DNA of 63,931 nucleotides, filler included, from Octopus bimaculoides (lineage: Eukaryota): assembly GCF_001194135.2 (NCBI RefSeq). It is 3 parts of 3 records of this genome, joined end to end, with 100 filler letters (N's around TTAATTAATTAA, not from the genome) between each part and the next. Parts side by side here need not be neighbours in the genome. Positions count along the whole stretch, not along the records: positions 1 to 29,819 come from NC_068985.1; 2 more parts are not named here. One strand, 5' to 3'. The notes below the pieces were generated by a model. It saw only the letters and a list, made by a program, of their open reading frames with translations, ran no database searches and was not told the DNA's origin. Position 1 is the first letter of the stretch, and each line of letters starts with the position of its first letter. The translations under genes were made by a program, and so were the position numbers. Shown piece after piece: positions 1-29,819 of the stretch.

Positions 1-535
1 GAATGAAAATAACGACCTGTAGATTGGAAATCATCATCTTCATCATAGTTTTAACATCCACATTTTATTAGGTTTCATGAGTCTGGCAGAATTCATCCAT
101 ATAGATATTTGTTAAAGTTTAAGGACTTAATGTGTTTCCTTGGTCTTTAGACACCTATGGAAAGACAATTGGAGCTAAACAACAATAACTGTAATAGTAA
201 CAACAATAACCACAAAAGTCAAAGTCAATGCTGCTGCTGCTATTGGTGCTGCTGCTGCTGCTGAAGCTACCGGTGGTGCTGGTGCCACTGCCACTGCTAA
301 CCAACCATTATTTCAAAAAAGATAGATCCCAGTAATTCACCTTGAAAAACAAAACAATGATAAATCTAAAAACAACTGTTAAGGGCTCTGGTTTGAGATA
401 AAACAGAGATAACAAGCCTGTGATCAGGATGCTTGTCTGTTTCAGCTCACATTAACAGAGGATCTACTAACTTATTTCCAACAGCTACACAAACTCAATA
501 TGCTGCCTCGTATAAAATAAATAATAAGAACTAAC

Positions 536-569
536 CATGCTATCTCCACAATGTTTTTCTGCTTGAAAT
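536..569 (-). CDS. 34-nt exon type A, unit 1: (K)FQAEKHCGDSM, phase 2->0
   Basis: Minus strand ctttcttttgcag|ATTTCAAGCA...GATAGCATG|gttagt; homologous to 7497-7530 and 18246-18279. Confidence 0.8.
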
Positions 570-3500
570 CTGCAAAAGAAAGAAAGGAACACATATAATG
601 ACTATCATCATCAACATCATGATCATCATCATTTTTATGTCTCTAGACAAAGATAAACATCATAAGATGATAACTTTTTGTACAACTTCATCTTTAGACA
701 TGAATTCTCTTTTAATATTGGAACCTACATTTGGACTTCATTTCAATTAGTTTCATTTCTGAACCACATTACAAGTTTTATTCTTGGCTTAATGCATGGT
801 ACCAGACCATTAATATTTAGTAAAGACAGAAATATTGGTTTCAAATTTTGGCACAAGGCCTGTAATGTCAATTGGTACTTATTTTATCNNNNNNNNNNNN
901 NNNNNNNNNNNNNNNNNNNNNNNNNNNNNNNNNNNNNNNNNNNNNNNNNNNNNNNNNNNNNNNNNNNNNNNNNNNNNNNNNNNNNNNNNNNNNNNNNNNN
1001 NNNNNNNNNNNNNNNNNNNNNNNNNNNNNNNNNNNNNNNNNNNNNNNNNNNNNNNNNNAGAAATATCGATCTGATGTCACTTCTGGCCTTACTAATTGCA
1101 TTATTGGTAAGACGTATATGTCCTGATTCTTTGATTCTCATGAGTTTCCCACTTTGGAATTACGAAATCTTCATTCTATAGCATTATATTCATTCATTTC
1201 TCACTCCATATGTATTAAAATGTTTATTCTATCATTAACGCTTTTCAATATTCTTCCATCCCAACCTTTAGAACCTCTCAGTGTTTCGTGTACAAGGCCT
1301 TCCATAAATGCAGTTTTACTGTTCCAACTGAAACAATGCAGATGGAGATGCATAAAATATACATTTTCATCTCAAAAGATGAAGTTAATAATCTGAAAAT
1401 CTTATAATCACATCTGCAATAACTCATCTCAAATATTTATAAGAGTGTAATGGGTGCTTTTGCTTGCCACCTGAACGGTTGCTATTTATGTATCACTGGA
1501 TTGCTTTTATGTGCCAATTAACATGATACCGGTATTTGCTCAAACACAACATAATGCCAAAGATCTTGGACATAGCCTCATTTGATCAGGATAAAATATT
1601 GCGATTGATTTGCGGTGCAACTAGGGCCAAAGACTAACCTCACAGAGGCTAGAGTCATAGAGGTGATTAAAGCACTCAAGTGTGGCAAGGCAGATGAAGT
1701 GGATGAGATGTTAAGAAAAATAAAAAGAGAAGGTATTCTCTGGTTGATTTGTGTATAGCATGGACTTCTGGAAGGACACCAAAACAATGGCAGTCTGGGG
1801 TGATGATCCCAATTTTGAAAAAGGGAGAGAAAACTCAAGGAAACAAATGTCTGCACTCGGAATTCCTTGATTTGTATATGTGTTATTCCTTGTTTCTGTT
1901 CTGGGTTGATATAAAAACTATAAAAGTTACATGACAAGGACTTATTGAAATTAAAATAGTAGTAGTAGCAGCAGCAGCAGGCATCCGTCGGTCTTGAGCA
2001 GCCATGGATTTGCATCCAAAGAAATCATGTCCGCTGCTGATGGTGGTGCAGCGCCCGTGTTGGCTGTACAGGCCCACACGGCAGTGGCAGTCACAGATAC
2101 AGCGACTGCATTTGAAGGAGCTGATTTTTCCATCTGTCGAATGCACTTTTCTTTGATGGTGAGCACCAGTTCTTCTGCCACGTTCTTCATTCCCTCTCAC
2201 AGTATTTGCCTCCAGTGTGGGTGATCATTTGAAACTTGTTCGTGTTTTCCTTGTATCGTCTATCTGGATGTTTTGTCCCTTTCTTGTATCACCTAACCGT
2301 CTGGATGTTTTGTCCCTTTCTTGTATCACCTAACCGTCTGGATGTTTTGTGTTCTTGTCCCATTCTGTATTCATCATCATCATCATCGTTTAACGTCCGC
2401 TTTCCATGCTAGCATGGGTTGGACAATTTGACTGAGGACTGGCGAACCAGATGGCTACAACAGGCTCCAATCTGATTTGGCAGAGTTTCTACAGCCAGAT
2501 GCCCATCCTAATGCCAACCACTCCGAGAGTGTAGTGGATCCTTTTAGTCAGGTGGTACTGGCAACGGCCATGCTCAAAATGGTGTATTTTACATGCTACC
2601 TGCACAGGAGCTAGTCCAGCGGCACTGGCAACAACCTCGCTCGTGATCACATTTATACCTGATGATCTCCTCATTTCAATAAGGTAAAAATCCAATAAAA
2701 ACAAAATTTAATACAAAAACTTACTTAGCTCCTTCTCTGTCAATACTTTTACGGTTGCACAGGTTGTTCCAAAGACTTTTGTAACCCTATAAATATTCAA
2801 AATGTAAGCACATGTTTAGACTTTATAATAAAATTAATGATTTAACATCTGTAGTTCTATTTTACCATGTTTTGATTGACTCTTCAATCAAACAGAATAT
2901 TGCCTAATTTCCTGAAGCAATTGGTTGTTTTGCTTCTCTACATCTACAGCAACATCAAATTTCAGATGTTTGATTCAAAAACAGACAGAAACATTGGAAT
3001 AATTCCAGAACATATTCTTTCAACCAACTTTGTACTGTAGGAAAATTAAAGTAATAATTTATAAACAATGCACAAGATCACACATTTTGTAGGAGTCTAG
3101 TTATTTGGCCACAGAACTCAACTAATAAAGGAATGTGGTTTACTACTTAGGGTTATAACTTCACAATTATAAAGTAATGGCTTTGGTTCCTGGACCAAGA
3201 GGTACATTATGCCCCTGAGTAAAACAGTTCAGTATATTTCCCTCCAGTCTACTTAGCTGACAATAAGCAACAAATGAGTGGTNNNNNNNNNNNNNNNNNN
3301 NNNNNNNNNNNNNNNNNNNNNNNNNNNNNNNNNNNNNNNNNNNNNNNNNNNNNNNNNNNNNNNNNNNNNNNNNNNNNNNNNNNNNNNNNNNNNNNNNNNN
3401 NNNNNNNCAGGTCATATTATTTTGTGTGAGATAGCTATGGGGTTATTTTTATGGGTTATTTTTCTAAATACTTGACTGATAATTTTTTTCTGAAATCAGA

Positions 3501-6500
3501 AAAGATGAAAGACGAAATTGACAAATCTGGGATTTAAAATCAGGCAATAATCCTCCACTTCATTAAAAGAAGTTGCAAAATATTCATCACATCTTGAACA
3601 AGAGAGAAAAAACGTTAAGAGATTTGGATATACTGGATTTTACAGTATCCAGATATAGTATTTGTGTAAGAAAAGAAGACAAAATGGTATCACTTTCAAC
3701 AACATTGCTCATTCAGAAATGACCTGTGATTAAGCCTTCCTGATTGAATGCTCCCATATCCAGCCTGAATAATCTAACTGTTGTATATTCACACGAACCG
3801 TATATGACAATATCATTTTCAAAATAAATACTCTCATCATTGAAGTTTTAAAGCCACAGGATAATGCATGATTAATTCAAAACAATGTGAAAAAATAAGC
3901 ATCAATGTTATCTAAGGAAAAGACAAAGGCCAATACAGTTTCACAGTATGGCTGTGAGAAGGGAAAGGGCAGGCTGAGATATCACAAGGCATCCAATCAG
4001 GTGTTTTAACAATCCTGGACTGCTACTGTTATTATCAAATTCCAAAAGGGAAAGGTAAATATAATTTCACTGGTATTTGAACTCAGAATGTAGACAAATA
4101 TCACAAAGCCTTCCACCTGATGCTCAAATCATTCTGTGAATATACTGCACTCTAAAAGAATCATATCAACTAACCTCACAGTCTTTGAAGTATCTCACTG
4201 CCAGCTTCCTGCAAAAAATATACAAACAAATTTTCATCACATCATCACAATCATCAGCTCACAAAAAACTGTTATTTTGTGTTTGTATATTTTAACATTT
4301 TAATCTAAATCTACAATTCATTTGAATAGGTCAAATCTTTAATTATCACCAGGTATCATGTTTGTTGATGTCTGTAGTGTATCAAACTGGAATATATTTG
4401 AATTATAAGTCTTTTGAAGACCTTCATCGATAATTAATCTTTAGAGAACGCTTAAGGTTTTTGCAGTTTTTTTCCTAAATGTATTTGAATGAGTTTTTAT
4501 GGACCTTTCTTACAATCCTTGCTCTTCCCAATGCAGCAGATTTCAGAATTGATGCAATTCTTGTAATTATACAAAACTCAATAAGGAAGCCTTTAAGTCT
4601 GTTGGTGACGACTGAGATTATTAATTGTTCTAAGTTAATATCTTTATTGTCCCTTAACATTGTGCCACCTTGCTTCTCCTTGCCTGGCTGACTGAGGTAG
4701 CCAAGTACCACCTCTATAATAAGACAACTATCTCTGCCTCTCTGTCATACACTAACCTCTTCCCAGGCTCACAGCCACATCCCTCCATTCCTCCCCTTCT
4801 CTCAACCAGGAGCCCTTTGTCTTGCAAGTCACTTGGCAACTCCACAGGTGCTGGTGCCACATGATGGTATCTGTGCAACTGCCATGTAGGAAGTTCCCAT
4901 GCTACTGCTACATAAAATGCGCTGAGTACACTCTGTAAAGTAGTTGGCATTAAGAAGGGCTTCCAGCAGCATTGACCATGCCAAAACATACAACTGGAGC
5001 CTGCTGGGGCCCTCCAGCTTACCATCTGTTTTCCATGCTAGCATAGGTTGGACTGTCTGACTGGAGGTGGCAAGGTGGAGAGCTGCAACAGGGGTCAGTC
5101 CCCTACTTTGGTAGGTTTCTATACCTGGATGCACTTCTTAATGCCAACCACTTTACAGAGTGCACTGGGTGCTTTTAAAGTGGCACCAGCAGAGATACAT
5201 CTTACATGGCACCAGGAATGGGGAATTTTAATTTTAATCAGAGTTTAAAACCTTTATTGTTCAATTCATTTCAATGTGAACTGGGGAAAGAAATGATCTT
5301 GAACTAAAAATTCCCCCCTTATTCTGTTCTGTGGGTGTATGGAATAGGCTTGAGCCTTTTGTCTTGCAGTTAAATACATACAAACAAAAATAGTGTATTA
5401 AAAGTTGCATAACCAGGACTTACTGAACTTGAAATAATGAACATATAGATTCCATGTTGTCTCATATCAACAATGTCATGGCTTCTCTTACTATTTCCTA
5501 CATTTATATTTCCTTATATCGTTATCATATTTATACAACACAATCTCCTCATAATTCAAAGTCAAAATCAAAGTTAAGCAGAATGTTATATATTCACTTA
5601 CTTGGCTTCCACAAGTCCAAAAGCTTCTAGATGAGCATCCACATCCAAGAGATAATATTTATACTTCTAAAAAAGTTTACAATAAAAGCATTTGTTGTGA
5701 CTTTATAATAAAAACACTGATTTGATATTAATAATTCTCTTTTGGACTGGTTTCGACTCTTCGATGAAACAAAACATTACCTGACTCACAGAAACACTTT
5801 TAAAAAAAGCTTATCCTTTTCTCTATACATTCTAACTTCCAGTAAAGAGCTGAAATCATTGACTGATGGGGGATATTACCTAACTTGAGAAGTGATGCAG
5901 TAAAGGGACGTAACATAATACTACATGGCACTTCATCTTGCATTGTCAACTGATTTTGATATACCTCTCTTAAAAAAAGATTCAATGCAGTCACTAAAAG
6001 ATAGCAGCAAATATCTCCCTTAAATCTTGCAAAAAACTAAAAGGTGTGGCTGTGTGTTAAGTCTATTATATGTAGCAAGTTTATATTTGAAAGGAGGAAT
6101 GGGTACTTCTCCTACCAACCACAAACTCTACCTCTGCCTATCACCTGATATGTTATGTGTTGTCTTATCAGACATGAAAAGATGAAAATCTATGTTGACT
6201 TCAGTATGATTTTGAATTCAAAAGGTCAACAATGGTGTTATGCTGTCATGTGATCTGCTCATCTATACCTTCATCAACTATCATTATCATCATCACTTAA
6301 CATCCGTTTTCCATGCTGGCATGCATTGGACAGTATGACAGGATCCGACCAGGCTCCATTTCTCCATTGAATTGCTAATTCAAACCAATTTACAGAGTGT
6401 AGTGGATGATCTTATGCAGCATCAGCATGGCTGTGTATACACGGCACCAGCACCCATAAGCCTCCAAGATTATGAATGCTCAGCTAGAGAAGGATACAGT

Positions 6501-9500
6501 GAGCATGCCTGTATGCAAGGACAACCCCACCTCTGCTTAGCTTGACATGTCTTGTCAAGCACAGCAAGCCACCAGGAGCCCTAGTCCCTGTCCTGTCATT
6601 CCCTCCGTGAGACCCAACATCTGAGGATCCTCTCTCACCACTTCATCCCACATCTTCCTGGGTCTACCCTTTCCGTTTTAAAAGTGTTTAACATAAGTTT
6701 TCCTGGAGGGGACGATTAGTTTCCATTTTAATTTGGTAAAGCTGTTTGTTGCTTGGCCTCAACATCTGAACGAAAAAACAAATGGATGGAGAGGAAACTG
6801 TTGATTAGGTCCAAATGCATGAAGGTGAGAGAATTGATGCTAAAGGCACCCAAGAAGCAGATGGTGGTGTTAAACTGGGTGGTATGTAAACCCTGTACCC
6901 AGTTTCCTGATAAAGCAAAGGAGTTTGATGAAAACCAAACAACTGGTCATCTTATGTCCATATGAATGAAAATAACGACCTGTAGATTGGAAATCATCAT
7001 CTTCATCATAGTTTTAACTTCCACATTTTATAGCTTTCGCGGGTTTGGCAGAATTTATTCATATAGATATTTGTTACAGTTTAAGGACTTAATGTGTTTC
7101 CTTGGTCTTTAGACACCTATGGAAAATCAATTGGAGATAAACAAAAATAAATGTAATAGTAAAAACAACACCCACAAAAATAACAATCAATGCTGCTGCT
7201 GCTAGTGGTGGTGGCACTACTACTGAAGCTGTTGGTGGTGCTGCTGCTGCTATCCCCACTATTCTAAAAAAGAAGACCCCAACAATTCACCTTCAAAACG
7301 AAAATGATGAAAAATCTAAAAACGACTGTTAAGGGCTCTGGTTTGAGATAAAATAGAGATGAGAGATAACAAGCCTGTGATCAGGATGCTTGTCTGTTTC
7401 AGCTCACATTAACAGAGGATCTACTAACTTATTTCCAACAGCTACACAAACTCAATATGCTGCCTCCTATAAAATAAATAAATAAGAAGAACTAACCTCA
7501 TTTTCAAAAAAATGTCTTTTTACTAGAAATCTGCAAAAGAAAGAAAGGAATACATATAATGACTATCATCATCAACATCATGATCATCATCATTTTTATG
7601 TCTCTAGACAAAGATAAACATCATAAGATGATAACTTTTTGTACAACTTCATCTTTAGACATGAATTCTCTTTTAATATTGGAACCTACATTTGGACTTC
7701 ATTTCAATTAGTTTCATTTCTGAACCACATTACAAGTTTTATTCTTGGCTTAATGCATGGTACCAGACCATTGATATTTAGTAAAGACAGAAATATTGGT
7801 TTCAAATTTTGGCACAAGGCCTGTAATGTCAATTGGTATTTATTTTATCAACCCTCAAAAGAAAGAAGATGACTTTGCTGAGATATAAACTCAGAATGTG
7901 AAGATGGACAAAATNNNNNNNNNNNNNNNNNNNNNNNNNNNNNNNNNNNNNNNNNNNNNNNNNNNNNNNNNNNNNNNNNNNNNNNNNNNNNNNNNNNNNN
8001 NNNNNNNNNNNNNNNNNNNNNNNNNNNNNNNNNNNNNNNNNNNNNNNNNNNNNNNNNNNNNNNNNNNNNNNNNNNNNNNNNNNNNNNNNNNNNNNNNNNN
8101 NNNNNNNNNNNNNNNNNNNNNNNNNNNNNNNNNNNNNNNNNNNNNNNNNNNNNNNNNNNNNNNNNNNNNNNNNNNNNNNNNNNNNNNNNNNNNNNNNNNN
8201 NNNNNNNNNNNNNNNNNNNNNNNNNNNNNNNNNNNNNNNNNNNNNNNNNNNNNNNNNNNNNNNNNNNNNNNNNNNNNNNNNNNNNNNNNNNNNNNNNNNN
8301 NNNNNNNNNNNNNNNNNNNNNNNNNNNNNNNNNNNNNNNNNNNNNNNNNNNNNNNNNNNNNNNNNNNNNNNNNNNNNNNNNNNNNNNNNNNNNNNNNNNN
8401 NNNNNNNNNNNNNNNNNNNNNNNNNNNNNNNNNNNNNNNNNNNNNNNNNNNNNNNNNNNNNNNNNNNNNNNNNNNNNNNNNNNNNNNNNNNNNNNNNNNN
8501 NNNNNNNNNNNNNNNNNNNNNNNNNNNNNNNNNNNNNNNNNNNNNNNNNNNNNNNNNNNNNNNNNNNNNNNNNNNNNNNNNNNNNNNNNNNNNNNNNNNN
8601 NNNNNNNNNNNNNNNNNNNNNNNNNNNNNNNNNNNNNNNNNNNNNNNNNNNNNNNNNNNNNNNNNNNNNNNNNNNNNNNNNNNNNNNNNNNNNNGAAACA
8701 AAGAAAAAACAAAACATGTTATTGTGAATCTGTGTAGTTTGGTAGAGTTTTAGAGTAATTAAGAATGAGGCCAGACTGGAGTTTATATTCTGGCGGTCCT
8801 TGTGGTCTAAATGGACACCATACAGATTCAAGAACGAAAGCTACATAACCTTCATAAAAGAGGATCACACCTTCAACAGGTCTGAGGTGTAGAATTCCAC
8901 TTGGGGCATTTGCTTGCTCATTTCCATATGCATAACAATTTGTCTCTTTGTTAAATATTATCAATTAAGCACCAAAGATAACCTTGCAGCATGTAGAGTC
9001 CATTGACTTTGGCTCTTGTTGTACATCACAAGAACGTATTCCCAAAGATGATCATGTCTCTGAAGACTGTTCCTTAGAATTCACTTTAGCCATATTCCTG
9101 ACAATAGCATCTGGCTACACTAGCAGTCTAGGCATGACTTTTTGTCAGAACATAAGGTATAGCAACTGAGAAGTGAAAACCATTTTAACTGACCAGCTGT
9201 GGCTACTTAACTCTTTGGCATTTAAAGCAGTTATATCCAGCCCGAATGTTCCATCTGATTTATGTTGAAGATAGCCAGATCTGACATTTCACACCTACCC
9301 TACAATCTCATTCTAAAAATAAACAAACATCTCATGAAATATGCAAAGCTACAAGATAAACCATGATCAATTCAAAATGNNNNNNNNNNTGCCATGCAGT
9401 AATTGAGGATATAATTTATATATTTTTTATGTTTGTTTTGGTCATCAGACTGCAACCATGCTGGGGCATTACCTTCAAGAATTTTGGTCAAAGGTATGAA

Positions 9501-12068: not shown

Positions 12069-12121
<53 letters not shown>

Positions 12122-18100: not shown

Positions 18101-18994
18101 AAAACAGACAAGAGATAACAAGTCTGTGGTTAGGATGCTTGTCTGTTTCAACTCACATTAACAGAGGATCTACTAACTTATTTCCAACAGCTACACAAAC
18201 GCAACATGTTGCCTCATATAAAATAAATAAATAATAAGAACTAACCTTGCTCTCTCCAATATAGTCTTTTGCTAGATTTCTGCAAAAGAAATAAAGGGAC
18301 ACATATCATTATCACTATCATCATCAACATCATCATCATCATTTTTATGTCTCTATAAATAAACAATTATCTCATGAAATTCTCAAAGCTACAAGATAAA
18401 CCATGATCAATTCAAAATGATGTGAATAAAGAAGCTTTACATTTCCCAGAGTAATCTGATTGCTAAACGGTTAATCATTGTATATTTTTTTAGTATCATC
18501 ATATTTAATGATGCATATTTTTAAGTCCATGTAGAGTGTATTATTTTCAAAATACAACTCATAAGGATCAGTTTGCCACTCCTTCTCGTTCATCAAGTCT
18601 GCCATGCAGTAATTGAGGATATAATTTATATATTTTTTATGTTTGTTTTGGTCATCAGACTGCAACCATGCTGGGGCATTACCTTCAAGAATTTTGGTCA
18701 AAGGTATGAACCCTTGAACATATAATTGAGTAAAGACAGAGAGAGATATGGAGGGTGGTAAGTGCCAGGGCATACCCATGAGGTTTGAAGGTCATAATAT
18801 AAGTGGCAGGATATTACCAAAGAAGCGTGATTAGAGAGTGGGGAGAAGTGAGAGGTGAAAGCTTGGGTGCATACAGAGACGTGTGGACTACCAGATAGAC
18901 AAAGCCAACCTCAACAGAATTCAAAATGTAAATATGGACGAAATGCCACTATGCATTGTGCCTGTTGTGCTAACAATCCTGTTACCTCACCATC

Positions 18995-19032
<38 letters not shown>

Positions 19033-22000
19033 NNNNNNNNNNNNNNNNNNNNNNNNNNNNNNNNNNNNNNNNNNNNNGCGTGTGTGTGTGTGTGTGTGTG
19101 TGTGTATGCATATATATATATATATATATATCAGTATATTGTGATCACATTTATACAGCACAATCTCCTCATTTTAATAAAGTAAAAATCCAATTTAAAT
19201 AAAACGTAATAGAAATATTTACTGAGCTCTTCTTTTGTCGACATCTCCTCTACTTATGTCTTTCAAAAGGTTACTGTAACCCTATAAATATTCAAAATGA
19301 AAGCATATGTTTAGACTTTATAATAAAATTAATGATTTAACATCAGTAGTTCTATTTTACCATGTAATTGACTCTTCAATCAAAATGGATATTGCCTGAC
19401 TTCCTGAAGCAATTGGTTGTTTTGCTTCTCTACATCCACAGGAAGATCAACTTTCAGATGTTTGATTCAAAAACAGACAGAAACATTGGAATAATTCCAG
19501 AACATATTCTTTCAACCAACTTTGTACTGTAGGAAAGTAATAATTTCTAAACAAAGCACAAAATCACACATTTTGTAGGAGTCTAGTTATTTGCCCACAG
19601 AACTCAACTAATAAAGGAATGTGGTTTACTACTTAGGGTTATAACTTCACAATTATAAAGTAATGGCTTTGGTTCCTGGACCAAGAGGTACATTATGCCC
19701 CTGAGTAAAACAGTTCAGTATATTTCCCTCCAGTCTACTTAGCTGACAATAAGCAACAAATGAGTGGTGCAGGAGCACTCTCTCAATCCAGCTATCATGT
19801 CCTCACTGTTGGGTGAAAGGTAGGATGGTTGAGAAGTTATTTGTATTGAATTCTCATTGAATAGAAACATAAAACACTTAGTGAACGTACAGTTTCATGC
19901 TACCAGGTCATATTATTTTGTGTGAGATAGCTATGGGGTTATTTTTATGGGTTATTTTTCTAAATACTTGACTGATAATTTTTTTCTGAAATCAGAAAAG
20001 ATGAAAGACGAAATTGACAAATCTGGGATTCAAAATCAGGCAATAATCCTCCACTTCATTAAAAGAAGTTGCAAAATATTCATCACATCTTGAACAAGAG
20101 AGAAAAAAACGTTAAGAGATTTGGATATACTGGATTTTACAGTATCCAGATATAGTATTTGTGTAAGAAAAGAAGACAAAATGGTATCACTTTCAACAAC
20201 ATTGCTCATTCAGAAATGACCTGTGATTAAGCCTTCCTGATTGAATGCTCCCATATCCAGCTCAAATATTCTACCTGTTCTATATTTACATGCATCTAAC
20301 TTCTCATACCTACCCTACAATGTCATCCTAAAAGTAAATAATATGATCATTGAAGTCTTAAAGCTACAAGATAATGCATGATTAATTCAAAACTGTGAAT
20401 AAATAAGCATTACCTTTGACAGAGGAATCTGAATTGTTTAAAGGATTAAACAAGAATAACAAAAATAGGAAAATTAAATAGAAGTCCAATACAAGAAACA
20501 AAGGCTTTCTCCTTCATCAGTTTCAATATCAAAGCTGCTGTGTCTACCAACACAACTTCAATAACTTTACTTGTGTTATCAAGCTTCAATAAATGGGATG
20601 CTACACTGAACTCACTGGCATTTCAATTCAGAAATTGTAAACATTGAACTAGTAAATCGAAATCTTGTATACTATGAAGTCTGTTCCCCTTAATGCTTCA
20701 CCAAATTACCAATATTCAAAAAACATGTAAAATTCCAAAACAAAGCAGAGAAGCAAAATAAGTTTGGAGAAGGGAATATATTTCATCTCTAGTCCCTAAC
20801 AGAACAAGGCCCTCACAGAAGGCAGCATATAATCATTTCATTTGCTCCATCATAGCAACTAAATCCTCGTCGACTGCCATCTTTGAAATGGCATCCACTT
20901 GCACTACGTTCTTAAGTTTCAGACATCGATCCAAAAAAAAGACAATACTTTTATGTATTTTTATAAGTCTGTCAGATGAAGCAAGTTAGTTTCTGTTGTG
21001 CGAGAGTATGATACCCTCTGGCGAGAAAGGACTGGACCATTACATATAAATAGTAGCCGTCTGAGTAAGTGAGTATTTCATGCTTGTTCCACAGTTTGTG
21101 TGTTGTTAGTTCAAAGTTTACAGTTTGAGTTAGCATCTTGGATTGTTGGTTCTTAAAACAATGATGTTACATTTGTGTGGTTACATTCTATTTGTTTCGA
21201 TTATATTGTTATTACACTGTTGCAGTGCATGTTTTTTTATCCACAAGGGTATAACATCTGTTGACAAGGATTGTTCGAAACTCACAATGGTTATTTGACA
21301 ATTTCTGCATTATGGCAAACCTATTAGCCACAGTAGTATAGTTTCAAGAGAAGCAACAGGAACAACCACAGGAATTGCAAAAACAAATACTACAACATCA
21401 ACAATTAACTGAGTTACAGTCAGCGAAGTCCAGTAATTTCAAAGCACCTGAAGATAGAGAAATTCAGGCAAAGATTATCTCGATAATGGAGCAAGTGAAT
21501 CAGGATTTATCTCAACAGACCATCACAGAAGAATATCAGACTCTGGTAAATCTTGAACTTGATGTGAAAAAATTACAACATAAAGACTCTGCAAAAATTC
21601 AAATGTATCGTCCCAGGTGGCAAAATCAAAAACAAAGTGTCAGGGCCCAATCCATGTTATGGTTGTGGGGAGGGGGGCCTACACTACAAAAAGGATTGTC
21701 TGTTTAAAAACAAAAAAGTGCTATAGTTGTCAGAAGCTGGGACACATGAGTCATTGTGGAACTATGAGTCTCAAACACAGAAAGTTCCAAGGTGTTTTCA
21801 GTGGAGAGTGATTGTGATGGGAAAACAAAAAAATTTATGCACATAAAAATAAATGATATGGATACCAAATTACAGTTAGACATAGGTAGTAACATCACGA
21901 TTATAAAAGCGGATACTTGGAAAATATTGACAAACTGAGATTATGTAAAACAGCAAGAATAGCAGGTGGTTTAACAGGCGATAAATTACATTTCATGAGC

Positions 22001-25000
22001 AAAACATTTGTTGATGTCACGTTTTGAGGCAAAGACACACGAAACAGGCTCCAATCTGATTTGGCAGAGTTTCTACAGCTGGATGCCCTTCCTAACGCCA
22101 ACAACTCAGAGAGTGTAGTGGGTGCTTTTACATGTCACCTGCACGAAGGCCAGTCAGGCGGTACTGGCAACAGCCATGCTCAAAATGTTACATTTTATGT
22201 GCCACCTGCACAAGAGCCAGTCCAGGGGCACTGGCAATGATCTCGCTTGAAAATCCTACGAAGGCCAGTCAGGTGGTAAAAATAAAAGAAGCTTTAGAAA
22301 ATAAACAGAATAAATATACGAATGCCTGTAGTTTTTCACTTTGCGATGATATTTTGATGTGTGCCCAAAGGGGTGGTGGTTCCAACTACATTACAAAAAA
22401 GTGTACTGCAACAATTTCACATCCAGGAATGGCAAAGATGAAGGCCCAAACGAAGAGTCATATCTATTGGCCATCTATGGACTGAGATATCGAAAGCTTG
22501 GTGAGAATGTGGTAAGTTTGTATGCTCACAGCCAAAGCCCTGCCAATAAACTATCAATCATGGCCAGAGAGGCAGAACCCATGGTCTAGGTTACACACTG
22601 ACGATGCCAAACCAGTAAACAGTGATTACTACCTAATCATAGTGGATAGCTGTACTAAGTGGCTGGACGTTTGCAGGTGCTATAGACAAACATCTAAGAT
22701 AACTATAAAGTTCTTATATGAATAGTCTGATGAAACGGTGTCCCTGACACCCTAGTTTCAAACAACAGAATGCAGTTCTCTGGGTATGAATTTAAGAACT
22801 TCACCCTACCACCTGAGCTCAAACGGGCACTTAGAAAGATTAGTGGACACTTTCAAAAGAGTGTTAAGAAAATGTGGAATGAATTAAGAAGCTCTGAAGC
22901 AGTGAGAAATTTCTTAATAAACAGAATGACCCCCAGTCCCAGAATAAATTCGAAGAAGTCTCCTGCAGGATTGAGGTTCACAAGAAGAATAAAATCCATT
23001 TCTGATAAGCTGTTACCGGAGAAAAAAAGATGTAAAGAAAATACGAAAGAGCTACTAAAATACATCAAGACAGATGATAAAGTGCATTTCAAAACTAATA
23101 GAAATGTTAGGACTAGGAAGATGGCCTTGTTACCAGAAAAACTGGAAGTATGATGTATCTAATTAAAGGGACATATAAACCAACTATGGAAGAGGAATAC
23201 CCAAGTTCAGGAAGAAATTCCCATGGAAGTATTCTGCGAAATATTCAATGTACCTGTACCAAAAGTAATAGAGCCCCAAAGAACCAGTATGAGAAAAAGG
23301 CAGATGAAACACCTTGAGATAAGTGAAAGAAATACTATATTAGTATATATATATGAGTAAAAAATTTCTTTATTTCTTTGAAACACTAAATCTCAGAAGA
23401 GGAGATGTTGTGTGAGAGTATCGACTGGTGAGAATGGATTGGACCACTACATATAAATAGCAGTAGTCTCAGAAAGTGAGTAGTTCATGCTAGTTCCACA
23501 GTTCATGTATTGGTGGTCCAAAGTTTACACTTTGAGTTAGCATGTTGGATTGTTGGTTTTTAATAGAATGATGTTACGTTCTGTGTGTTTACTGCCGTTT
23601 GTTTCAATTAGATTGTTATTACACTTGCAGTGTATTCGTTTAACCATAAACATATTACAGTCTCCATGACATTTTGGTAGCCCTGCCTCAGACTTGTAAG
23701 AATTTCAGTGTAGGATGTTCAACCTGAATATCTGAAGGTAAACAATAATCGGTGGAGAGGAAATCCTGATTTGGTTCAAATGCATGAAAGTGAGGGAATT
23801 CTCAGTAAAGTCACCCAAGAACCAATCTTTTAAATTATTCTGGTAGAAAACATGAGAAATCTCAGTCATGACATCTCTAATTAGAAACACATCAGAATGA
23901 ACAGGTGACTTAGATGAAACTGCACCTTGTTACCTAATGTGATGCCACAGGTAGGCTAATGATATCGTTTACCTTATTTCTTAAATGAATTCTTAAGTCT
24001 TTAGAAAAACCTTCATAGATGACAGAATGTTGAAGGTTTTTGCAGGTTTATTTTTAACCATTTAACAGATCATTCAATCAAATGCAATGGATATTTATCT
24101 ATATTGTTCTGAATTCCTAAAGCATTATCTTGTAGATCCAGTGTCACTACTAGTATTGCTGCTACTAATACTACCAGCAACAGCACCAGCACCACCATCA
24201 CAACCATTAGTACAACAACAGCTGCTGCCACTACCAATATATTCAACACAGGACTTACATTGCTGCAAGTGTCATCTGTAGTTAGGTTGCTGCCCAATTT
24301 CAGACAGCATTAAGAGATTATCTGCAAAATTAATCCCAACACTGACATGAATTGAGGTAGAGGACGGGCAAATGCACAGGATTTGATCCTACGACCTAAG
24401 AACGTAAAATCCAATATTTTATTCCGACAACCATAGCATTTTTGCAGGTGTATCTACTTTGGCAGTCTATAATTAAATAATACCAGATTTTGTAACAAAT
24501 TAGTTATTTTAAGCTTTTTAGTAATTGTTTAGCCCTAGGTCAGTCCTCTTCCAGCAGACCTATTATCCCAAAAGTATGTTTCTTATGATAAAACCCAAAA
24601 AGGACAATTTTGTAGGACCTCCATCACTGGTAGGAAAAAGTGAGGATGGAACCATCACTTGTTTGGTATCATCAGACCATATACCTCAAGTGAATGCTTA
24701 CTACAGGAGGAATTCCACTGAATGCATCACTGGTACAGGTGGATAACACCTTAGACAAGTGTGTTCTACCACAGTAATTGCTTGACCAATTCCTTGTGAA
24801 TAAAATTTGGTAGATGGAAACTGTGTAGAAGACCAGCTGTTGCATCTACATTGAAGCCTCCCTCTGTCTACAGCACAATGTTATCTAAGGAAAAGACAAA
24901 GGCCAATACAGTTTCACAGTATGGCTGTGAGAAGGGAAAGGGCAGGATGAGATATCACAAGGCATCCAATCAAGTGTTTTAACAACCCTGAACTGCTACT

Positions 25001-26616
25001 ATTATTATTATTACCTAATTCAAAAAGGGAAAGGTACAATTAACTGCATTGATATTTGAACTCAGAATGTAGACAACCAAGACAAATACCGCAAAGCCTT
25101 CAAACCAATGCTCTAATCACTCTGCCAACGTACTGAACTGTAAATAAATTGTATCAACAAACCTTATGTCCTTCAAAGTATGTCTTTGCTAGTTTTCTGC
25201 AAAAAAAAAAACAAACATATTTTCATCACATCATCACAATCACCATCATTACTTCTACATTAGCTTACAAAAAGAACCATTACAGAATTATTATTTTGTG
25301 TTTGTACATTTTAATATTTTAATCTAAATCTACAATTCATTTGAATAGGTCTAATCTTTAATTATCACCAGGTATCATATTTGTGGATGCCTGTAAAGCA
25401 TCAAACTGGAATGTATTTGAATTATAAGTCTTTTGAAGACCTTCATCCATCAATAATCTTTAGAGAATGTTGAAGGTTTTTATTATCATTGCTGGTGCAC
25501 ATGAATGTTTTACATTCATAATCAGTGTTCTTGATAATTGGTCACAACCACTTTACTCAGATGTCAAGAACCTTTCTTACAATCCTTGCTCTTCCCAATA
25601 CAGCAGATTTCAGAATTGATGCAATTCTTGTAATTATACAAAACTCAATAAGGGAGCCTTTAAGTCTGTTGGTGACGACTGAGATTATTAATTGTTCTAA
25701 GTTAATATCTTCATTGTCCCTTAACATTGTGCCACCTTGCTTCTCCTTGCCTGGCTGACTGAGGTAGCCAAGTACCCCCTCTATAATAAGACAACTATCT
25801 CTGCCTCTCTGTCATACACTAACCTCTTGCCAGGCTCACAGCCACATCCCTCCATTCCTCCCCTTCTCTCAACTAAGAGCCCTTTGTCTTGCAAGTCATT
25901 TGGCAACTCCACTGGTGCTGGTGCCACGTGACAGCACCTGTGCCACTGCCATGTAGGAAGTTCCCATGCTACTGCCACATAAAATGCGCTGAGTACACTC
26001 TGTAAAGTAGTTGGCATTAAGAAGGGCTCCCAGCAGCAGAGACCATGCCAAAACATACAACTGGAGCCTGCTGGGGCCCTCCAGCTTGCCAGTTCCTGCC
26101 AAAATATCCAATCCATGCCATTAAATGATGATGGTGATACATGATGATCATGATGAAGATGATGATGGTAATGATGATGCTGATTACCATAAAACAAACA
26201 CTTTTGTAGGTAAAAAAAAAGTTTTACTTTTTAAATTGAATCAGGGCAAAATGAAGACAGACCAGGCTCAGATGACAATCAAGTTAACTGACAGATCTTG
26301 CAGATCTAAACAGGATTATNNNNNNNNNNNNNNNNNNNNNNNNNNNNNNNNNNNNNNNNNNNNNNNNNNNNNNNNNNNNNNNNNNNNNNNNNNNNNNNNN
26401 NNNNNNNNNNNNNNNNNNNACAATGTCATGGCTTCTCTTACTATTTCCTACATTTATATTTCCTTATATTGTTATCATATTTATACATCACAATCTCCTC
26501 ATAATTCAAAGTCAAAATCAAACTTAAGTAGAATGTTATATATTCACTTACTTTGCCTCCGCCTGTCCAAAATTTTGCTGATAAGCATCCACTTCCCATT
26601 CAAACTTTTTATATTC
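536..26616 (-). CDS. Partial multi-exon gene encoding a tandem 31-33-aa repeat protein of unknown family; start and stop lie outside the window or contig
   Basis: Eleven exons with AG/GT ends and compatible phases splice into an open frame: EYKKFEWEVDAYQQNFGQAEAK-KLAKTYFEGHK-GYSNLLKDISRGDVDKRRAQ-NLAKDYIGESK-[exon in N gap]-KFAEKYFKDFE-DYGDFCIELDNRDIDKDRAK-FLVKRHFFENE-KYKYYLLDVDAHLEAFGLVEAK-KLAVRYFKDCE-GYKSLWNNLCNRKSIDREGAK-FQAEKHCGDSM. Joining into a single transcript is inferred. Confidence 0.8.
1640..1850 (+). mobile_element. Degenerate non-LTR (RTE-like) reverse transcriptase N-terminal fragment
   Basis: EVIKALKCGKADEVDEMLRKIKREGILWL, then frameshift to IAWTSGRTPKQWQSGVMIPILKKGEK, typical LINE RT domain 0/1 motifs. 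Confidence 0.75.
1960..2230 (-). mobile_element. RTE LINE 3' end with C-terminal Cys/His motif and (CTG/CTA)n tail
   Basis: FKCSRCICDCHCRVGLYSQHGRC followed by ...GACGGATGCC-(TGC/TAC)n on the minus strand. Confidence 0.65.
2372..2645 (-). mobile_element. Non-autonomous (GAT)n-tailed RTE-related/SINE-like repeat
   Basis: ...CCAACCCATGCTAGCATGGAAAGCGGACGTTAAACGATGATGATG tail; related copies at about 6290-6680, 10880-11330, 11987-12120, 17310-17720, 22045-22280 and 28410-28860. Confidence 0.8.
2725..2786 (-). CDS. 62-nt exon type B, unit 1: GYKSLWNNLCNRKSIDREGA(K), phase 0->2
   Basis: atatttatag|GGTTACAAA...GGAGCTAA|gtaagt; one codon longer than its two paralogs, frame kept. Confidence 0.8.
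4175..4208 (-). CDS. 34-nt exon type A', unit 1: (K)KLAVRYFKDCE
   Basis: ttttttgcag|GAAGCTGGCA...GACTGTGAG|gttagt. Confidence 0.8.
5602..5666 (-). CDS. 65-nt exon type B', unit 1: KYKYYLLDVDAHLEAFGLVEA(K)
   Basis: aaacttttttag|AAGTATAAA...GAAGCCAA|gtaagt. Confidence 0.8.
7497..7530 (-). CDS. 34-nt exon type A, unit 2: (K)FLVKRHFFENE
   Basis: ctttcttttgcag|ATTTCTAGTA...GAAAATGAG|gttagt. Confidence 0.8.
10050..10620 (-). mobile_element. RTE LINE RT C-terminal fragment, interrupted by a gap
   Basis: DMRRLERNE..MLLWMCNISVH...LREMLGI...IKERRLNWSGHVMR, matching the RTE RRL.W.GHV.R motif. Confidence 0.75.
11865..11923 (-). CDS. 59-nt exon type B, unit 2: DYGDFCIELDNRDIDKDRA(K)
   Basis: atatttatag|GATTACGGA...AGAGCTAA|gtaaat. 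Confidence 0.8.
11987..12120 (+). mobile_element. 5'-truncated (GAT)n-tailed insertion specific to unit 2
   Basis: Interrupts tttaacat|agttctattttacc; the site is empty in paralogs at about 2845 and 19340. Confidence 0.85.
12833..12866 (-). CDS. 34-nt exon type A', unit 2: KFAEKYFKDFE
   Basis: ctttcttttgcag|AAAATTTGCA...GACTTTGAG|gttagt. Confidence 0.8.
13083..14643 (+). mobile_element. Mariner (Tc1/mariner, DD34D, Hsmar1/cecropia-like) with disrupted transposase
   Basis: About 40-bp TIRs (tcaggttgagtaaaaagtaa.. / ..ttactttttactcagtctaa), TA TSD at 13081-82 and 14644-45; motifs WVPNDL, TCDEK, HDNAQPH, HPAYSPDL; empty site in units 1 and 3. Confidence 0.95.
13310..13588 (-). mobile_element. 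Solo LTR nested in the mariner transposase
   Basis: 279 bp, minus-strand ends TGTTGTG...TATAACA, 5-bp TSD GTTAT at 13305-13309 and 13589-13593. Confidence 0.8.
18246..18279 (-). CDS. 34-nt exon type A, unit 3: (Q)NLAKDYIGESK
   Basis: ttcttttgcag|AAATCTAGCA...GAGAGCAAG|gttagt. Confidence 0.8.
19223..19281 (-). CDS. 59-nt exon type B, unit 3: GYSNLLKDISRGDVDKRRA(Q)
   Basis: atatttatag|GGTTACAGT...AGAGCTCA|gtaaat. Confidence 0.8.
20994..23659 (+). mobile_element. Internally deleted Ty3/Gypsy LTR retrotransposon
   Basis: LTRs 20994-21256 and 23406-23659 (TG...CA), PPT agaagaggaga, near-TSD gtttc/gtctc, gag knuckle CYSCQKLGHMSHC, protease LQLDIGS, integrase HPGMAKMK..IYWP and PWSRLHTD..YYLIIVDS; no RT/RNase H seen. 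Confidence 0.9.
25163..25196 (-). CDS. 34-nt exon type A', unit 3: (K)KLAKTYFEGHK
   Basis: ttttttttgcag|AAAACTAGCA...GGACATAAG|gtttgt; donor weaker than the paralogs but still GT. Confidence 0.75.
26552..26616 (-). CDS. 65-nt exon type B', unit 3: EYKKFEWEVDAYQQNFGQAEA(K)
   Basis: aaacttttctag|GAATATAAA...GAGGCAAA|gtaagt. Confidence 0.8.
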
Positions 26617-26689
26617 CTAGAAAAGTTTATAACGAAAGCATTTGTTGTAACTTAATAATAAAAGTAATGATTTGACATTAATAGTTCTA

Positions 26690-29171: not shown

Positions 29172-29205
<34 letters not shown>

Positions 29206-29637: not shown

Positions 29638-29800
29638 AGGAGTGGCTGTGTGATAAGTAGCTTGCTTACCAATCACATGGTTCCGAGTTCAGTCCCACTG
29701 CGTGGCACCTTGGGCAAGTGTCTTCTACTATAGCCTCGGGCCGATCAAAACCTTGTGAGTGGATTTGGTAGACGGAAACTGAAAGAAGCCCGTCGTATAT
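29638..29800 (+). mobile_element. tRNA-derived SINE followed by (TA)n
   Basis: ggagtggctgtgtgataag (A box)...ggttccgagttcagtcccactgcgtggcaccttgggcaagtg (B box); related minus-strand copy at about 37275-37415. Confidence 0.8.
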
Positions 29801-29819
29801 ATGTATGTATATATATATA

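What the first reader, a model, noticed from the sequence alone, without database searches (positions are those of the whole stretch)
536..26616. Hidden micro-exon repeat-protein gene on the minus strand, invisible to ORF calling
Seen: eleven exons of 34, 59, 62 or 65 nt recur at homologous positions in the tandem units. Each has a pyrimidine tract + AG and a GT(A/T)AG/GTAAA-type donor. Type B/B' exons run phase 0->2 and type A/A' exons phase 2->0, strictly alternating, with no stop codon despite heavy substitution; the single indel is one whole codon. Each B+A pair encodes a 31-33-aa module, roughly Y..F/L...[VLI]D....[IVF][DG]...AK.LA..YF.D.E. Inference: a functional, probably lineage-specific repeat protein whose start and stop are outside this contig. 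I do not recognise the family.
Basis: partly seen in the sequence, partly recalled or inferred. Interest (0 to 1): 0.92.

Follow-up and report, generated by a model that had tools for sequence, protein, structure and literature searches.

The report
Split-exon repeat gene of octopus
The eleven tiny exons are real: RNA reads join them exactly as predicted into the middle of a very large Octopus-only repeat protein of unknown function, and its repeat exons differ far more from one another than the introns around them do.

Summary
Observation confirmed and interpretation supported. All 11 minus-strand exons (34/59/62/65 nt) lie at the stated coordinates, with polypyrimidine-AG acceptors, GT donors, alternating phases and no stop codon. 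RNA-seq shows eight of the nine junctions that have both exons in the window directly, and the ninth indirectly. Read depth falls to zero in the flanking introns wherever this was looked at. A twelfth exon seen in RNA is missing from the window, probably in the N gap 16413-17092.

The organism is Octopus bimaculoides. Seven of the exons are already in a fragmentary RefSeq model (XP_014787006.1, uncharacterised). The window is colinear with residues about 911-1112 of a 2076-aa O. vulgaris protein. The O. sinensis orthologue is 1935 aa and its gene spans about 310 kb. These proteins have N-terminal UBA-like domains, then 32-36 modules of about 32 aa (two helices each), then an Ala/Glu/Lys-rich tail. 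The module matches no Pfam family, PDB sequence or PDB fold. The only other database hit is one weak match, probably spurious, outside Octopus.

Paralogous exons are about 65% identical while their flanking introns are about 90% identical, and up to 99%. Yet each module has its own orthologue in the other species. I infer that the introns were homogenised by gene conversion or unequal crossing-over and the exons were not. Function is unknown.

The parts
26552..26616 (-). B' exon of unit 3 (65 nt, phase 0->2), encoding EYKKFEWEVDAYQQNFGQAEAK
   Evidence: RNA depth is confined to the exon. Upstream, the RNA continues into an A-type exon (..LAEKHFGICK) that is not in the window. Most reads carry four linked variants.
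25163..25196 (-). A' exon of unit 3 (34 nt, phase 2->0), encoding (K)KLAKTYFEGHK
   Evidence: Joint 19281|25163 has 39/36/10 reads plus a contig.
19223..19281 (-). B exon of unit 3 (59 nt)
   Evidence: Junction 18279|19223 is shown by the loose-end consensus.
18246..18279 (-). A exon of unit 3 (34 nt)
   Evidence: Downstream, the RNA continues into the missing B' exon (GAATATATAGAG...).
16413..17092 (.). Assembly gap that probably holds the B' exon of unit 2. The exon is seen in RNA and encodes EYIEFKKEV...PETFGRRQAK.
   Evidence: Loose ends at 12866 and 18245. The sequence is absent from the window. It is orthologous to O. sinensis residues 844-865.
12833..12866 (-). A' exon of unit 2 (34 nt)
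   Evidence: Depth is exactly exon-wide, and the X25 contig joins it to exon 11865-11923.
11865..11923 (-). B exon of unit 2 (59 nt)
   Evidence: Joint 7530|11865.
7497..7530 (-). A exon of unit 2 (34 nt)
   Evidence: Joints 5666|7497 and 7530|11865.
5602..5666 (-). B' exon of unit 1 (65 nt)
   Evidence: Joints 4208|5602 and 5666|7497.
4175..4208 (-). A' exon of unit 1 (34 nt)
   Evidence: Joints 2786|4175 and 4208|5602.
2725..2786 (-). B exon of unit 1 (62 nt, one extra codon)
   Evidence: Joints 569|2725 and 2786|4175.
536..569 (-). A exon of unit 1 (34 nt). The transcript continues beyond the window's low end.
   Evidence: Joint 569|2725. The 434-nt RNA contig is about 86 nt longer than the exons it covers in the window, so it appears to run on past this exon (my arithmetic).
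1..29638 (-). Three and a bit tandem copies of a 4-exon, roughly 10-11 kb unit (B'-A'-B-A). The introns share 75-97% identity over hundreds of bases, TE fragments included.
122..154 (-). Terminal exon of the RefSeq model (VSKDQGNTLSP*), repeated at 7084-7116 and 29280-29309. Not supported by RNA here.
   Evidence: no joint 154|536; depth near 0.
16257..16289 (-). Start exon of the RefSeq and JGI models (MESICSVFQLQ). Probably an artefact of the neighbouring gap.
   Evidence: RNA shows exon 12833-12866 preceded by a B' exon instead.

Best explanation
The window is an internal piece of one very large protein-coding gene of Octopus bimaculoides on the minus strand. Its orthologues are O. sinensis LOC115212235 (1935 aa, gene about 310 kb) and an O. 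vulgaris hypothetical protein (2076 aa).

The protein. It has N-terminal UBA-like domains, then 32-36 tandem modules of 31-33 aa, then a C-terminal region ending in a roughly 325-aa tail rich in Ala, Glu and Lys. Each module is predicted to be a helix-loop-helix. Each is encoded by two small exons: a B exon of 59-65 nt (phase 0->2) and an A exon of 34 nt (phase 2->0). The intron between them interrupts the second helix. Two module types alternate, so the genomic repeat unit holds four exons in about 10-11 kb.

Shown here: the exons, eight junctions, the missing exon, the colinear orthology, the helical prediction, and the lack of any known family for the module.

Inferred: the modules arose by old tandem duplication, before these Octopus species split, and each kept its own sequence. 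The introns between them have since been homogenised by gene conversion or unequal crossing-over among units. Either selection removes exchange tracts that would overwrite an exon, or the mismatch-rich exons stop the tracts. The result is islands of diverged exon in near-identical intron.

Function is not shown. My working guess is an intracellular scaffold or spacer: UBA-like protein-binding heads, a long alpha-helical array as platform, and a helical Ala-rich tail.
For: Gene and splicing.
- Joints 569|2725, 2786|4175, 4208|5602 and 5666|7497 are, 7530|11865 and 19281|25163. All read CT..AC on the + strand, which is GT..AG on the minus strand, with 10-56 reads per run in three raw RNA-seq runs plus Logan RNA contigs.
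- Junctions 11923|12833 and 18279|19223 come from loose-end consensus.
- Depth is zero in the intron next to the exons.

Identity.
- The spliced peptide is 100% identical to XP_014787006.1 of O. bimaculoides.
- An exhaustive phmmer search finds the O. sinensis protein at E = 2e-146 in 12 stretches.
- The O. vulgaris protein is.
- The window is colinear and ungapped with O. sinensis 856-971 (82/116 identical) and with O. vulgaris 911-1112.
- The O. sinensis gene range is about 310 kb.
- UBA_4 and UBA_8 score above their Pfam cut-offs.

Module.
- There are 32 modules in O. sinensis, alternating 33 and 31-32 aa.
- AlphaFold2 with an in-register repeat alignment gives pLDDT 83.7 and two helices per module.

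Introns versus exons.
- Paralogous exons are 264/405 = 65% identical. Their 150-nt flanks are 2087/2323 = 90% identical (Fisher p = 1e-32).
- For the A exons of units 1 and 2, the exon is 21/34 identical and the flanks are 99% and 98% (p = 1e-11). The change is sharp at the splice sites.
- Exon dS of 0.2-1.4 far exceeds the intron divergence.
- Each A exon is closer to its orthologue (5-7 of 11 residues) than to its paralogues (2-3 of 11).
- Which units are most alike changes along the unit.
- O. sinensis and O. vulgaris differ by exactly four modules, which fits unequal exchange.
Against: - No intron DNA from another Octopus species could be fetched, because the gene range was too long. The key comparison was therefore not made: paralogous introns within a species against orthologous introns between species.
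- dN/dS is 0.9-2.9 for the B-A modules, and orthologue identity is only 49-71%. Fast evolution of the exons therefore contributes as well.
- The window comes from a gappy short-read assembly. Near-identical intron copies are the hardest thing for such an assembly to resolve, and I had no calls left to check them against DNA reads.
- Nothing here bears directly on function: tissue of expression, binding partners and localisation are all unknown.
- Junction 25196|26552 was seen only indirectly.
Confidence: 0.8

Rival explanations
1. The units are young duplicates and the exons have diverged very fast since then. The cause would be diversifying selection or an exon-focused mutation process, as proposed for venom toxin genes. 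On this reading the introns simply show the true young age of the copies.
For: - dN/dS is 0.93-2.85 in the three B-A module comparisons.
- Orthologue identity is low, at 49-71%.
- A cluster of three non-synonymous changes and one synonymous change within 20 nt of exon 26552-26616 is seen in RNA reads.
Against: - Each module has its own colinear orthologue in O. sinensis and O. vulgaris and is much closer to it than to its paralogues. For example, the B-A module of unit 2 is 81% identical to its orthologue and 29-32% to its paralogues. The exons were therefore already distinct before the species split.
- Synonymous divergence in the exons is also far above the intron divergence.
- The B'-A' modules give dN/dS of 0.15-0.46.
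Confidence: 0.15
2. The intron flanks have been kept alike since an old duplication by purifying selection, for example as splicing enhancers that very small exons in very long introns would need.
For: - Similarity runs right up to the splice sites.
- The acceptor tracts and donors are nearly invariant within each exon type.
Against: - Similarity of 80-97% extends for hundreds to over a thousand bases and includes transposon fragments at matching positions.
- There is no steady fall of identity with distance from the exon. Identity drops only at insertion breakpoints.
- The flanks of the A and A' exon types, which stem from the older duplication, are only 62-78% alike (family D9).
Confidence: 0.08
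3. The pattern is an artefact: repeated introns were collapsed or copied during short-read assembly, or the small exons are pieces of a transposable element.
For: - The scaffold has nine N gaps, and contigs break at matching positions in different units.
- The introns are full of SINE, LINE and mariner fragments.
Against: - All 11 exon sequences are transcribed; those that were laid down alone on short stretches show exon-wide depth and none in the adjacent intron.
- A single 434-nt RNA contig strings together seven exons plus part of the missing one.
- The two exon sequences that were searched for (the missing B' exon and the upstream A-type exon) occur nowhere else in the window.
- Independent DNA runs hold 50-67% of the 31-mers of 4000-7900.
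Confidence: 0.04

Closest known systems
Octopus sinensis LOC115212235 (XP_036358878.1, 1935 aa) and the O. vulgaris hypothetical protein (2076 aa); fragmentary O. bimaculoides models XP_014787006.1 and A0A0L8FTR5
   Same: This is the same gene family, and the window is the O. bimaculoides orthologue. The modules are colinear at 49-81% identity per module. The 33 / 31-32 aa alternation matches the 99 / 93-96 nt exon pairs.
   Different: All of these records are named uncharacterised or hypothetical. The O. bimaculoides models hold only 7 of the 11 exons and add a start exon, and in the RefSeq model also a terminal exon. RNA contradicts the start exon and does not support the terminal exon. No paper names these accessions.
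Spider flagelliform silk gene (Flag) and Argiope MaSp2: concerted evolution of introns within a gene (Hayashi & Lewis 2000, as cited in PMC3563967)
   Same: These genes have iterated exon-intron units whose introns are nearly identical within one gene, while the exons are less uniform.
   Different: Silk exons are long, of low complexity and prone to slippage, which was offered as the reason for their variability. Here the exons are 34-65 nt of complex sequence, and each module has a conserved orthologue. Selection for module identity is therefore the more likely reason. The proteins are unrelated.
Schistosoma micro-exon genes (MEGs)
   Same: Both have many very short exons separated by long introns, are restricted to one lineage and are hard to annotate (bioRxiv 10.1101/2023.06.21.545858, abstract seen).
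   Different: - MEG introns are described as symmetrically inserted, which I take to mean exon lengths in multiples of three, so that exons can be skipped one at a time. Here the lengths are 34, 59, 62 and 65 nt, and only a B+A pair keeps the frame.
- MEG products are secreted. The octopus orthologue starts MGFNKALVVKRF..., with no obvious signal peptide by eye.
- There is no sequence similarity.
Alpha-helical hairpin repeat proteins (TPR, HEAT, Sel1, PPR and similar)
   Same: The module is about 32 aa and is predicted as two helices, repeated dozens of times in tandem.
   Different: There is no Pfam match at E <= 10. A module profile finds nothing significant among PDB sequences. Foldseek against the PDB gives a best E of 2.4 and TM below 0.3.
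Venom and toxin genes with introns more conserved than exons (snake PLA2, conotoxins; from my own knowledge, not checked here)
   Same: The exons are much more diverged than the flanking introns, and synonymous sites are elevated as well.
   Different: In those cases separate genes diversify after recent duplication. Here internal repeats of a single gene keep their one-to-one orthology between species.

Membership tests
Octopus LOC115212235-type protein (UBA-like domains + array of ~32-aa modules + Ala-rich tail) | Tandem 31-33 aa modules with the pattern xYxxFxxELxxx..ID..AKxLAxxYFxxx, the two types alternating | tested here: met
   The window's modules align with the 32 O. sinensis modules. 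The phmmer search gives E = 2e-146.
Octopus LOC115212235-type protein (UBA-like domains + array of ~32-aa modules + Ala-rich tail) | Colinear one-to-one orthology of successive modules | tested here: met
   There is a 116-aa ungapped match to O. sinensis 856-971 (71% identical). The unit 3 part matches O. vulgaris 911-993 (49%), which lies directly upstream of 997-1112.
Octopus LOC115212235-type protein (UBA-like domains + array of ~32-aa modules + Ala-rich tail) | N-terminal UBA-like domains and a C-terminal Ala/Glu/Lys-rich tail | not testable with these tools
   These parts lie outside the window and were seen only in the orthologues.
Schistosome-type micro-exon gene (MEG) | Symmetric micro-exons (length a multiple of 3), so that single exons can be skipped in frame | tested here: not met
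   Exon lengths are 34, 59, 62 and 65 nt, with phases alternating 0->2 and 2->0.
Schistosome-type micro-exon gene (MEG) | Secreted product with a signal peptide | not tested
   No signal-peptide predictor was available. By eye, the orthologue's N-terminus MGFNKALVVKRFSIDNW is not hydrophobic.
Known helical repeat families in Pfam (TPR, HEAT, Sel1, PPR, ANK and others) | A significant match to the family profile | tested here: not met
   There are no Pfam hits for the window peptides at E <= 10. None falls in the repeat region of P0003 apart from chance-level matches.
UBA-like domain (PF14555 / PF22566) as the origin of the modules | Profile-profile similarity between the modules and the protein's own UBA-like domains | tested here: not met
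   hhalign gives probability 0.4% and E = 0.16 over 9 columns.
Concerted evolution of introns within a gene (Flag-silk type) | Paralogous introns of one gene nearly identical, and more alike than the exons they flank | tested here: met
   The flanks are 90% identical against 65% for the exons, and 98-99% against 62% for the A exons of units 1 and 2.
Concerted evolution of introns within a gene (Flag-silk type) | Paralogous introns within a species more alike than orthologous introns between species | not testable with these tools
   The O. sinensis locus could not be fetched because its gene range exceeds 100 kb. The point is inferred only from the exon orthology.
Exons derived from a transposable element | The exon sequence is part of a dispersed repeat, and RNA coverage continues into the flanks | tested here: not met
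   RNA depth is confined to the exons. The neighbouring SINE-like repeats show a quite different depth, above 1000.

The most novel reading that the evidence does not exclude
The module array may be a diversity-generating surface. On this reading the exons are held apart, or actively driven apart, by diversifying or balancing selection, while the intron scaffold is kept uniform by frequent exchange. Modules would then vary between alleles as well as between repeats. The linked QQN->RKY variant of exon 26552-26616, present alongside the reference form in all three RNA samples, would be a first example. The number of modules would also vary between individuals and species, as in the four-module difference between O. 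sinensis and O. vulgaris. That would make this an Octopus-specific hypervariable intracellular repeat protein built on a previously undescribed two-helix module.
Probability: 0.15. Interest if true: 0.75.

Novelty: new variant of a known kind. Interest (0 to 1): 0.55.

Why it matters
- It confirms that reading raw sequence can pick out a gene made almost entirely of 34-65 nt exons scattered over hundreds of kilobases. ORF scanning misses such a gene, and gene predictors captured only part of it.
- It ties three database entries named uncharacterised or hypothetical together into one Octopus-restricted family. The family has a defined architecture and a repeat module that matches no known family or solved fold.
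- It gives a clean example of diverged exons sitting in homogenised introns inside a single gene. With chromosome-scale assemblies of three Octopus species, this can be used to measure gene-conversion tract lengths and the strength of selection that keeps internal repeats distinct.
- It corrects the current O. bimaculoides gene model, which lacks four upstream exons and one exon lost in a gap, and carries a start exon that RNA contradicts and a terminal exon that RNA does not support.

Tried and rejected
- **Pfam on the spliced peptides and on the repeat region of the orthologue:** nothing.
- **Module profile against PDB sequences:** only chance-level hits, the best being ribosomal protein L12 at E = 0.047.
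- **Foldseek of the 4-module model against the PDB:** nothing. The single-sequence AlphaFold2 model was too poor to use (pLDDT 57.6).
- **Modules as degenerate UBA-like domains:** I suspected this from a shared "ID..AK" motif. hhalign does not support it.
- **A SEP-like motif in the orthologue's C-terminal region** (LILYKNGVLFDGGMFRYDW, spotted by eye): neither Pfam nor PDB sequence search supports it.
- **The RefSeq terminal exon at 122-154:** no spliced reads join it to exon 536-569.
- **The second exhaustive-search hit, P0004** (2956 aa, E = 1.5e-4): an acidic repeat protein from an unnamed ENA contig, most likely a compositional match. I did not pursue it.
- **Fetching the O. sinensis locus for intron comparison:** failed because the gene range was too long. 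P0002 is not on record in the contig index.
- **Literature searches for the accession numbers:** nothing found.
- **Rfam and tRNA scans of the window:** nothing found.
- **Global alignments of +/-400 nt around the exons:** uninformative, because insertions break the homology. I replaced them with local alignments and distance-binned alignments.
Full report
**What is in the sequence**

The 29.8-kb piece holds nine runs of N. It consists of a little more than three tandem copies of a roughly 10-11 kb unit, whose copies share 75-97% identity over hundreds of bases.

| Unit | B' | A' | B | A |
|---|---|---|---|---|
| 3 | 26552-26616 | 25163-25196 | 19223-19281 | 18246-18279 |
| 2 | not in the window | 12833-12866 | 11865-11923 | 7497-7530 |
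| 1 | 5602-5666 | 4175-4208 | 2725-2786 | 536-569 |

- Every exon follows a pyrimidine tract plus AG.
- Every exon precedes a GT donor: GTAAGT, GTAAAT, GTTAGT, and once GTTTGT.
- B-type exons (59, 62 or 65 nt) run from phase 0 to phase 2. A-type exons (34 nt) run from phase 2 to phase 0.
- The spliced frame has no stop codon.
- The only length difference among the B exons is one codon.
- No ORF of the six-frame scan corresponds to the gene, so it is indeed invisible to ORF calling.

**Is it transcribed and spliced as predicted?**

Yes. I used three raw RNA-seq runs of the same organism and the Logan contigs of a fourth run.

| Junction | Evidence |
|---|---|
| 569\|2725 | spliced reads and contig |
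| 2786\|4175 | spliced reads and contig |
| 4208\|5602 | spliced reads and contig |
| 5666\|7497 | spliced reads and contig |
| 7530\|11865 | spliced reads and contig |
| 19281\|25163 | spliced reads and contig |
| 11923\|12833 | consensus of read or contig parts hanging off the exon |
| 18279\|19223 | consensus of read or contig parts hanging off the exon |
| 25196\|26552 | indirect only |

- Each directly seen joint has 10-56 reads per run. Each skips a segment that reads CT..AC on the + strand, which is GT..AG on the minus strand.
- When short stretches around three exons were laid down alone, depth was exon-wide and zero in the adjacent intron. The signal is therefore mature mRNA and not DNA contamination.
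- One 434-nt RNA contig strings together seven exons plus part of the missing exon.
- For 25196|26552, a 179-nt contig extends 119 nt beyond 18279, which equals 59 + 34 + 26 nt. It ends where a variant bubble begins in exon 26552-26616.

**The assembly gaps**

All six gaps flagged by the scan program lie in introns that are bridged by confirmed junctions, so the exons on either side are continuous and in frame in the mRNA. Three further gaps lie inside the finding:

- Gap 19033-19077 is bridged by junction 18279|19223.
- Gap 26320-26419 is bridged only indirectly.
- Gap 16413-17092 is different. RNA shows that exon 18246-18279 is followed by, and exon 12833-12866 is preceded by, a B' exon. This exon begins GAATATATAGAGTTCAAAAAGGAAGT and ends TCCAGAAACATTTGGAYGCAGACAAGCCAA, encoding EYIEFKKEV...PETFGRRQAK. 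It occurs nowhere in the window, even allowing five mismatches. So a twelfth exon is missing from the assembly, most probably in that gap.

Upstream of 26616 the mRNA continues into an A-type exon (...LAEKHFGICK) that is also not in the window. Downstream of 536 it continues as well. The gene therefore runs off both ends of the window.

**What gene is it?**

The 107-aa spliced peptide is 100% identical to XP_014787006.1, "uncharacterized protein LOC106881215" of Octopus bimaculoides. It is 83% identical to A0A0L8FTR5_OCTBM. Both are fragmentary models.

- They contain seven of the eleven exons.
- They add a start exon (16257-16289) beside the gap. The RefSeq model also adds a terminal exon (122-154, repeated in every unit).
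- RNA contradicts the start exon and gives no support to the terminal exon.

An exhaustive phmmer search of 1.84 billion representative proteins found only one substantial relative. This is XP_036358878.1 of O. sinensis, at 1935 aa, E = 2e-146, in 12 matched stretches. There was also one weak, probably compositional, hit. A word-indexed search with the O. sinensis protein added a 2076-aa O. vulgaris hypothetical protein. The O. sinensis gene spans about 310 kb.

The window peptide aligns without gaps to O. sinensis 856-971 (82/116 identical). Together with the unit 3 modules, it aligns colinearly to O. vulgaris 911-1112. The window is therefore an internal part of the O. bimaculoides orthologue. 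No paper in the library mentions any of these accessions.

**Architecture of the protein (from the orthologues)**

- **N-terminus.** The N-terminal 380 residues carry UBA-like domains. UBA_4 scores 43 bits against a cut-off of 21.8, and UBA_8 scores 38 bits against 26. By eye there are four copies.
- **Module array.** Residues 395-1422 of the O. sinensis protein are 32 tandem modules, alternating 33 aa and 31-32 aa. This matches the window's 99-nt (B'+A') and 93-96-nt (B+A) exon pairs. The consensus is xYxxFxxELxxx(P)xxIDxxxAKxLAxxYFxxx.
- **C-terminus.** It ends in a tail of about 325 residues that is 42% Ala, 16% Glu and 12% Lys.
- **Species difference.** O. sinensis and O. vulgaris are 98% identical but differ by one 129-aa block, which is exactly four modules.

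**The module is not a known repeat**

- Pfam finds nothing.
- A 38-module profile finds nothing significant among PDB sequences.
- AlphaFold2 on one sequence gave a poor model (pLDDT 57.6).
- With an alignment of in-register 4-module windows, AlphaFold2 gave pLDDT 83.7 and eight helices, two per module. The model's pTM is only 0.53, so the packing between modules is uncertain.
- Foldseek of that model against the PDB gave no match (best E = 2.4, TM below 0.3).
- The phase-2 intron falls inside the second helix.
- My idea that the modules derive from the UBA-like domains was not supported (hhalign probability 0.4%).
- A SEP-like motif that I thought I saw in the C-terminal region was not supported either.

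**The unusual part: diverged exons in near-identical introns**

Between the units, homologous exons are only 56-76% identical, 264/405 overall. The 150 nt on either side are 2087/2323 = 90% identical (Fisher p = 1e-32).

The extreme case is the A exons of units 1 and 2. They match at 21 of 34 bases, while their flanks are 99% and 98% identical (p = 1e-11). The alignments show the change of regime exactly at the AG and at the GT.

Both synonymous and non-synonymous divergence are high in the exons: dS 0.2-1.4 and dN 0.16-0.63. dN/dS is 0.93-2.85 for the B-A modules and 0.15-0.46 for the B'-A' modules. The sequences are very short, so these ratios are noisy.

The orthologues decide between "young copies with fast exons" and "old exons with homogenised introns":

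- Each module of the window is much closer to its colinear orthologue than to its paralogues. Unit 2 B-A is 81% identical to its orthologue, unit 1 B'-A' 73% and unit 1 B-A 62%, against 22-45% between paralogues.
- At the level of the A exon alone, the figures are 5-7 of 11 residues to the orthologue and 2-3 of 11 to the paralogues.

So the exons were already distinct before O. bimaculoides separated from the O. sinensis/vulgaris lineage. Intron flanks that are 98-99% identical cannot be that old. I therefore infer that the introns have been homogenised since then, by gene conversion or unequal crossing-over between units, and that the exons escaped. Three further observations fit exchange between units:

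- The pair of units that is most alike changes along the unit. It is units 1 and 2 around exon A, units 1 and 3 around exon B, and units 2 and 3 around exon A'.
- The homology includes transposon fragments at matching positions.
- The sister species differ by a whole number of units.

Why the exons escape is not shown. Selection against overwriting a module that has its own role is the simplest reason. Termination of exchange tracts at the mismatch-rich exons would reinforce the effect.

The direct test could not be run, because the O. sinensis locus could not be fetched. That test compares paralogous introns within a species with orthologous introns between species.

**Comparison with what is known**

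- **Spider silk genes.** The closest described pattern is in Flag and Argiope MaSp2, whose multiple introns are nearly identical within one gene while the exons vary more (Hayashi & Lewis 2000, as cited in PMC3563967). There the exon variability was put down to slippage in low-complexity repeats, which does not apply here.
- **Schistosome micro-exon genes.** They share the tiny exons and long introns. Their introns are described as symmetrically inserted, which I take to mean exons in multiples of three, and their products are secreted (bioRxiv 10.1101/2023.06.21.545858, abstract). The octopus exons are asymmetric and must be used in pairs, so this is not a gene of that type.
- **Toxin genes.** Genes with introns more conserved than exons are a looser analogy, which I give from memory only.

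**Function**

Nothing here tests function. The facts available are these:

- The orthologue's N-terminus shows no obvious signal peptide by eye.
- The orthologues carry UBA-like domains, a roughly 1000-residue helical repeat array and an Ala/Glu/Lys-rich tail.
- Exon depth was 30-55 reads with about 6% of each run sampled.

These suggest an intracellular scaffold or spacer protein. This is a guess with low confidence.

**Verdict**

- The gene is real but not wholly new to the databases. Part of it is annotated as an uncharacterised protein, and full-length orthologues exist in two sister species.
- New here: four unannotated exons confirmed, one exon lost in a gap recovered from RNA, and the model's start exon contradicted and its terminal exon left unsupported.
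- Also new: the family and its module are defined and have no known relatives, and the intron-exon divergence pattern is shown.
The gene exists in annotation, and the evolutionary pattern has a precedent. It remains above ordinary because of the novel module, the extreme gene architecture and the clean, testable case of selective homogenisation.

Noticed in passing
window 2157-2658, 11935-12060, 21918-22385: SINE-like repeats carry RNA depth of roughly 1000-3500 reads, against 30-55 for the gene's exons. Hundreds of reads 'go back' about 111-115 nt (for example 22259->22149, with AGGA in between). This suggests that the expressed copies elsewhere in the genome are tandem arrays of a unit of about 115 nt. 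There is no Rfam or tRNA match.
   Followed up: partly
window 26552-26616: Most RNA reads differ from the window at four linked positions: 26560 C>T, 26574 T>A, 26577 G>T and 26579 T>C. On the coding strand this changes QQN to RKY and adds one synonymous change. Both forms occur in all three raw runs. Whether this is an allele or a close paralogue is unresolved. Only one of the four changes is of the A-to-G type, so RNA editing cannot explain the set.
   Followed up: partly
window 122-154, 7084-7116, 29280-29309: Every unit carries a copy of a potential terminal exon (VSKDQGNTLSP, then a stop codon). For the copy at 122-154, an AATAAA lies about 50 nt downstream. The RefSeq model uses the copy at 122-154. 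No spliced reads support it in the runs examined.
   Followed up: yes
window 14217-14648 (+): This ORF has the C-terminal motifs of a mariner/Tc1 transposase (HDNAQPH...PHPAYSPDL). It is a transposon remnant inside an intron.
   Followed up: no
window 6594-6675, 10042-10123, 11455-11536, 17641-17722, 28776-28857: These are five copies of an 82-nt segment. On the minus strand it reads as a peptide of the ..GRPRKMWDEVV.. type that I recognise from memory as the C-terminal end of LINE reverse transcriptases. Three of the copies sit at matching positions in the three units, so the insertion is part of the repeated unit (family D13).
   Followed up: no
P0003 versus P0005 (O. sinensis versus O. vulgaris proteins): The two orthologues are 98% identical but differ by one block of 129 aa, which is exactly four modules. 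Some of the extra O. vulgaris modules look like mosaics of B and A exons from other modules. This could be a real copy-number difference or an annotation artefact.
   Followed up: partly
window 15081-15497 and 25781-26197 (-): Two duplicated 138-aa ORFs begin with a His-rich stretch (MFYGNQHHHYHHHLHHDHH). They arise from the imperfect ATG/CAT microsatellite in matching introns and are probably non-coding.
   Followed up: no
window 29640-29819: In the fourth partial unit the sequence downstream of the A exon is present (29488-29638), but a SINE-like insertion replaces the place where the A exon would be. The real upstream A exon seen in RNA must lie beyond the end of the contig.
   Followed up: partly
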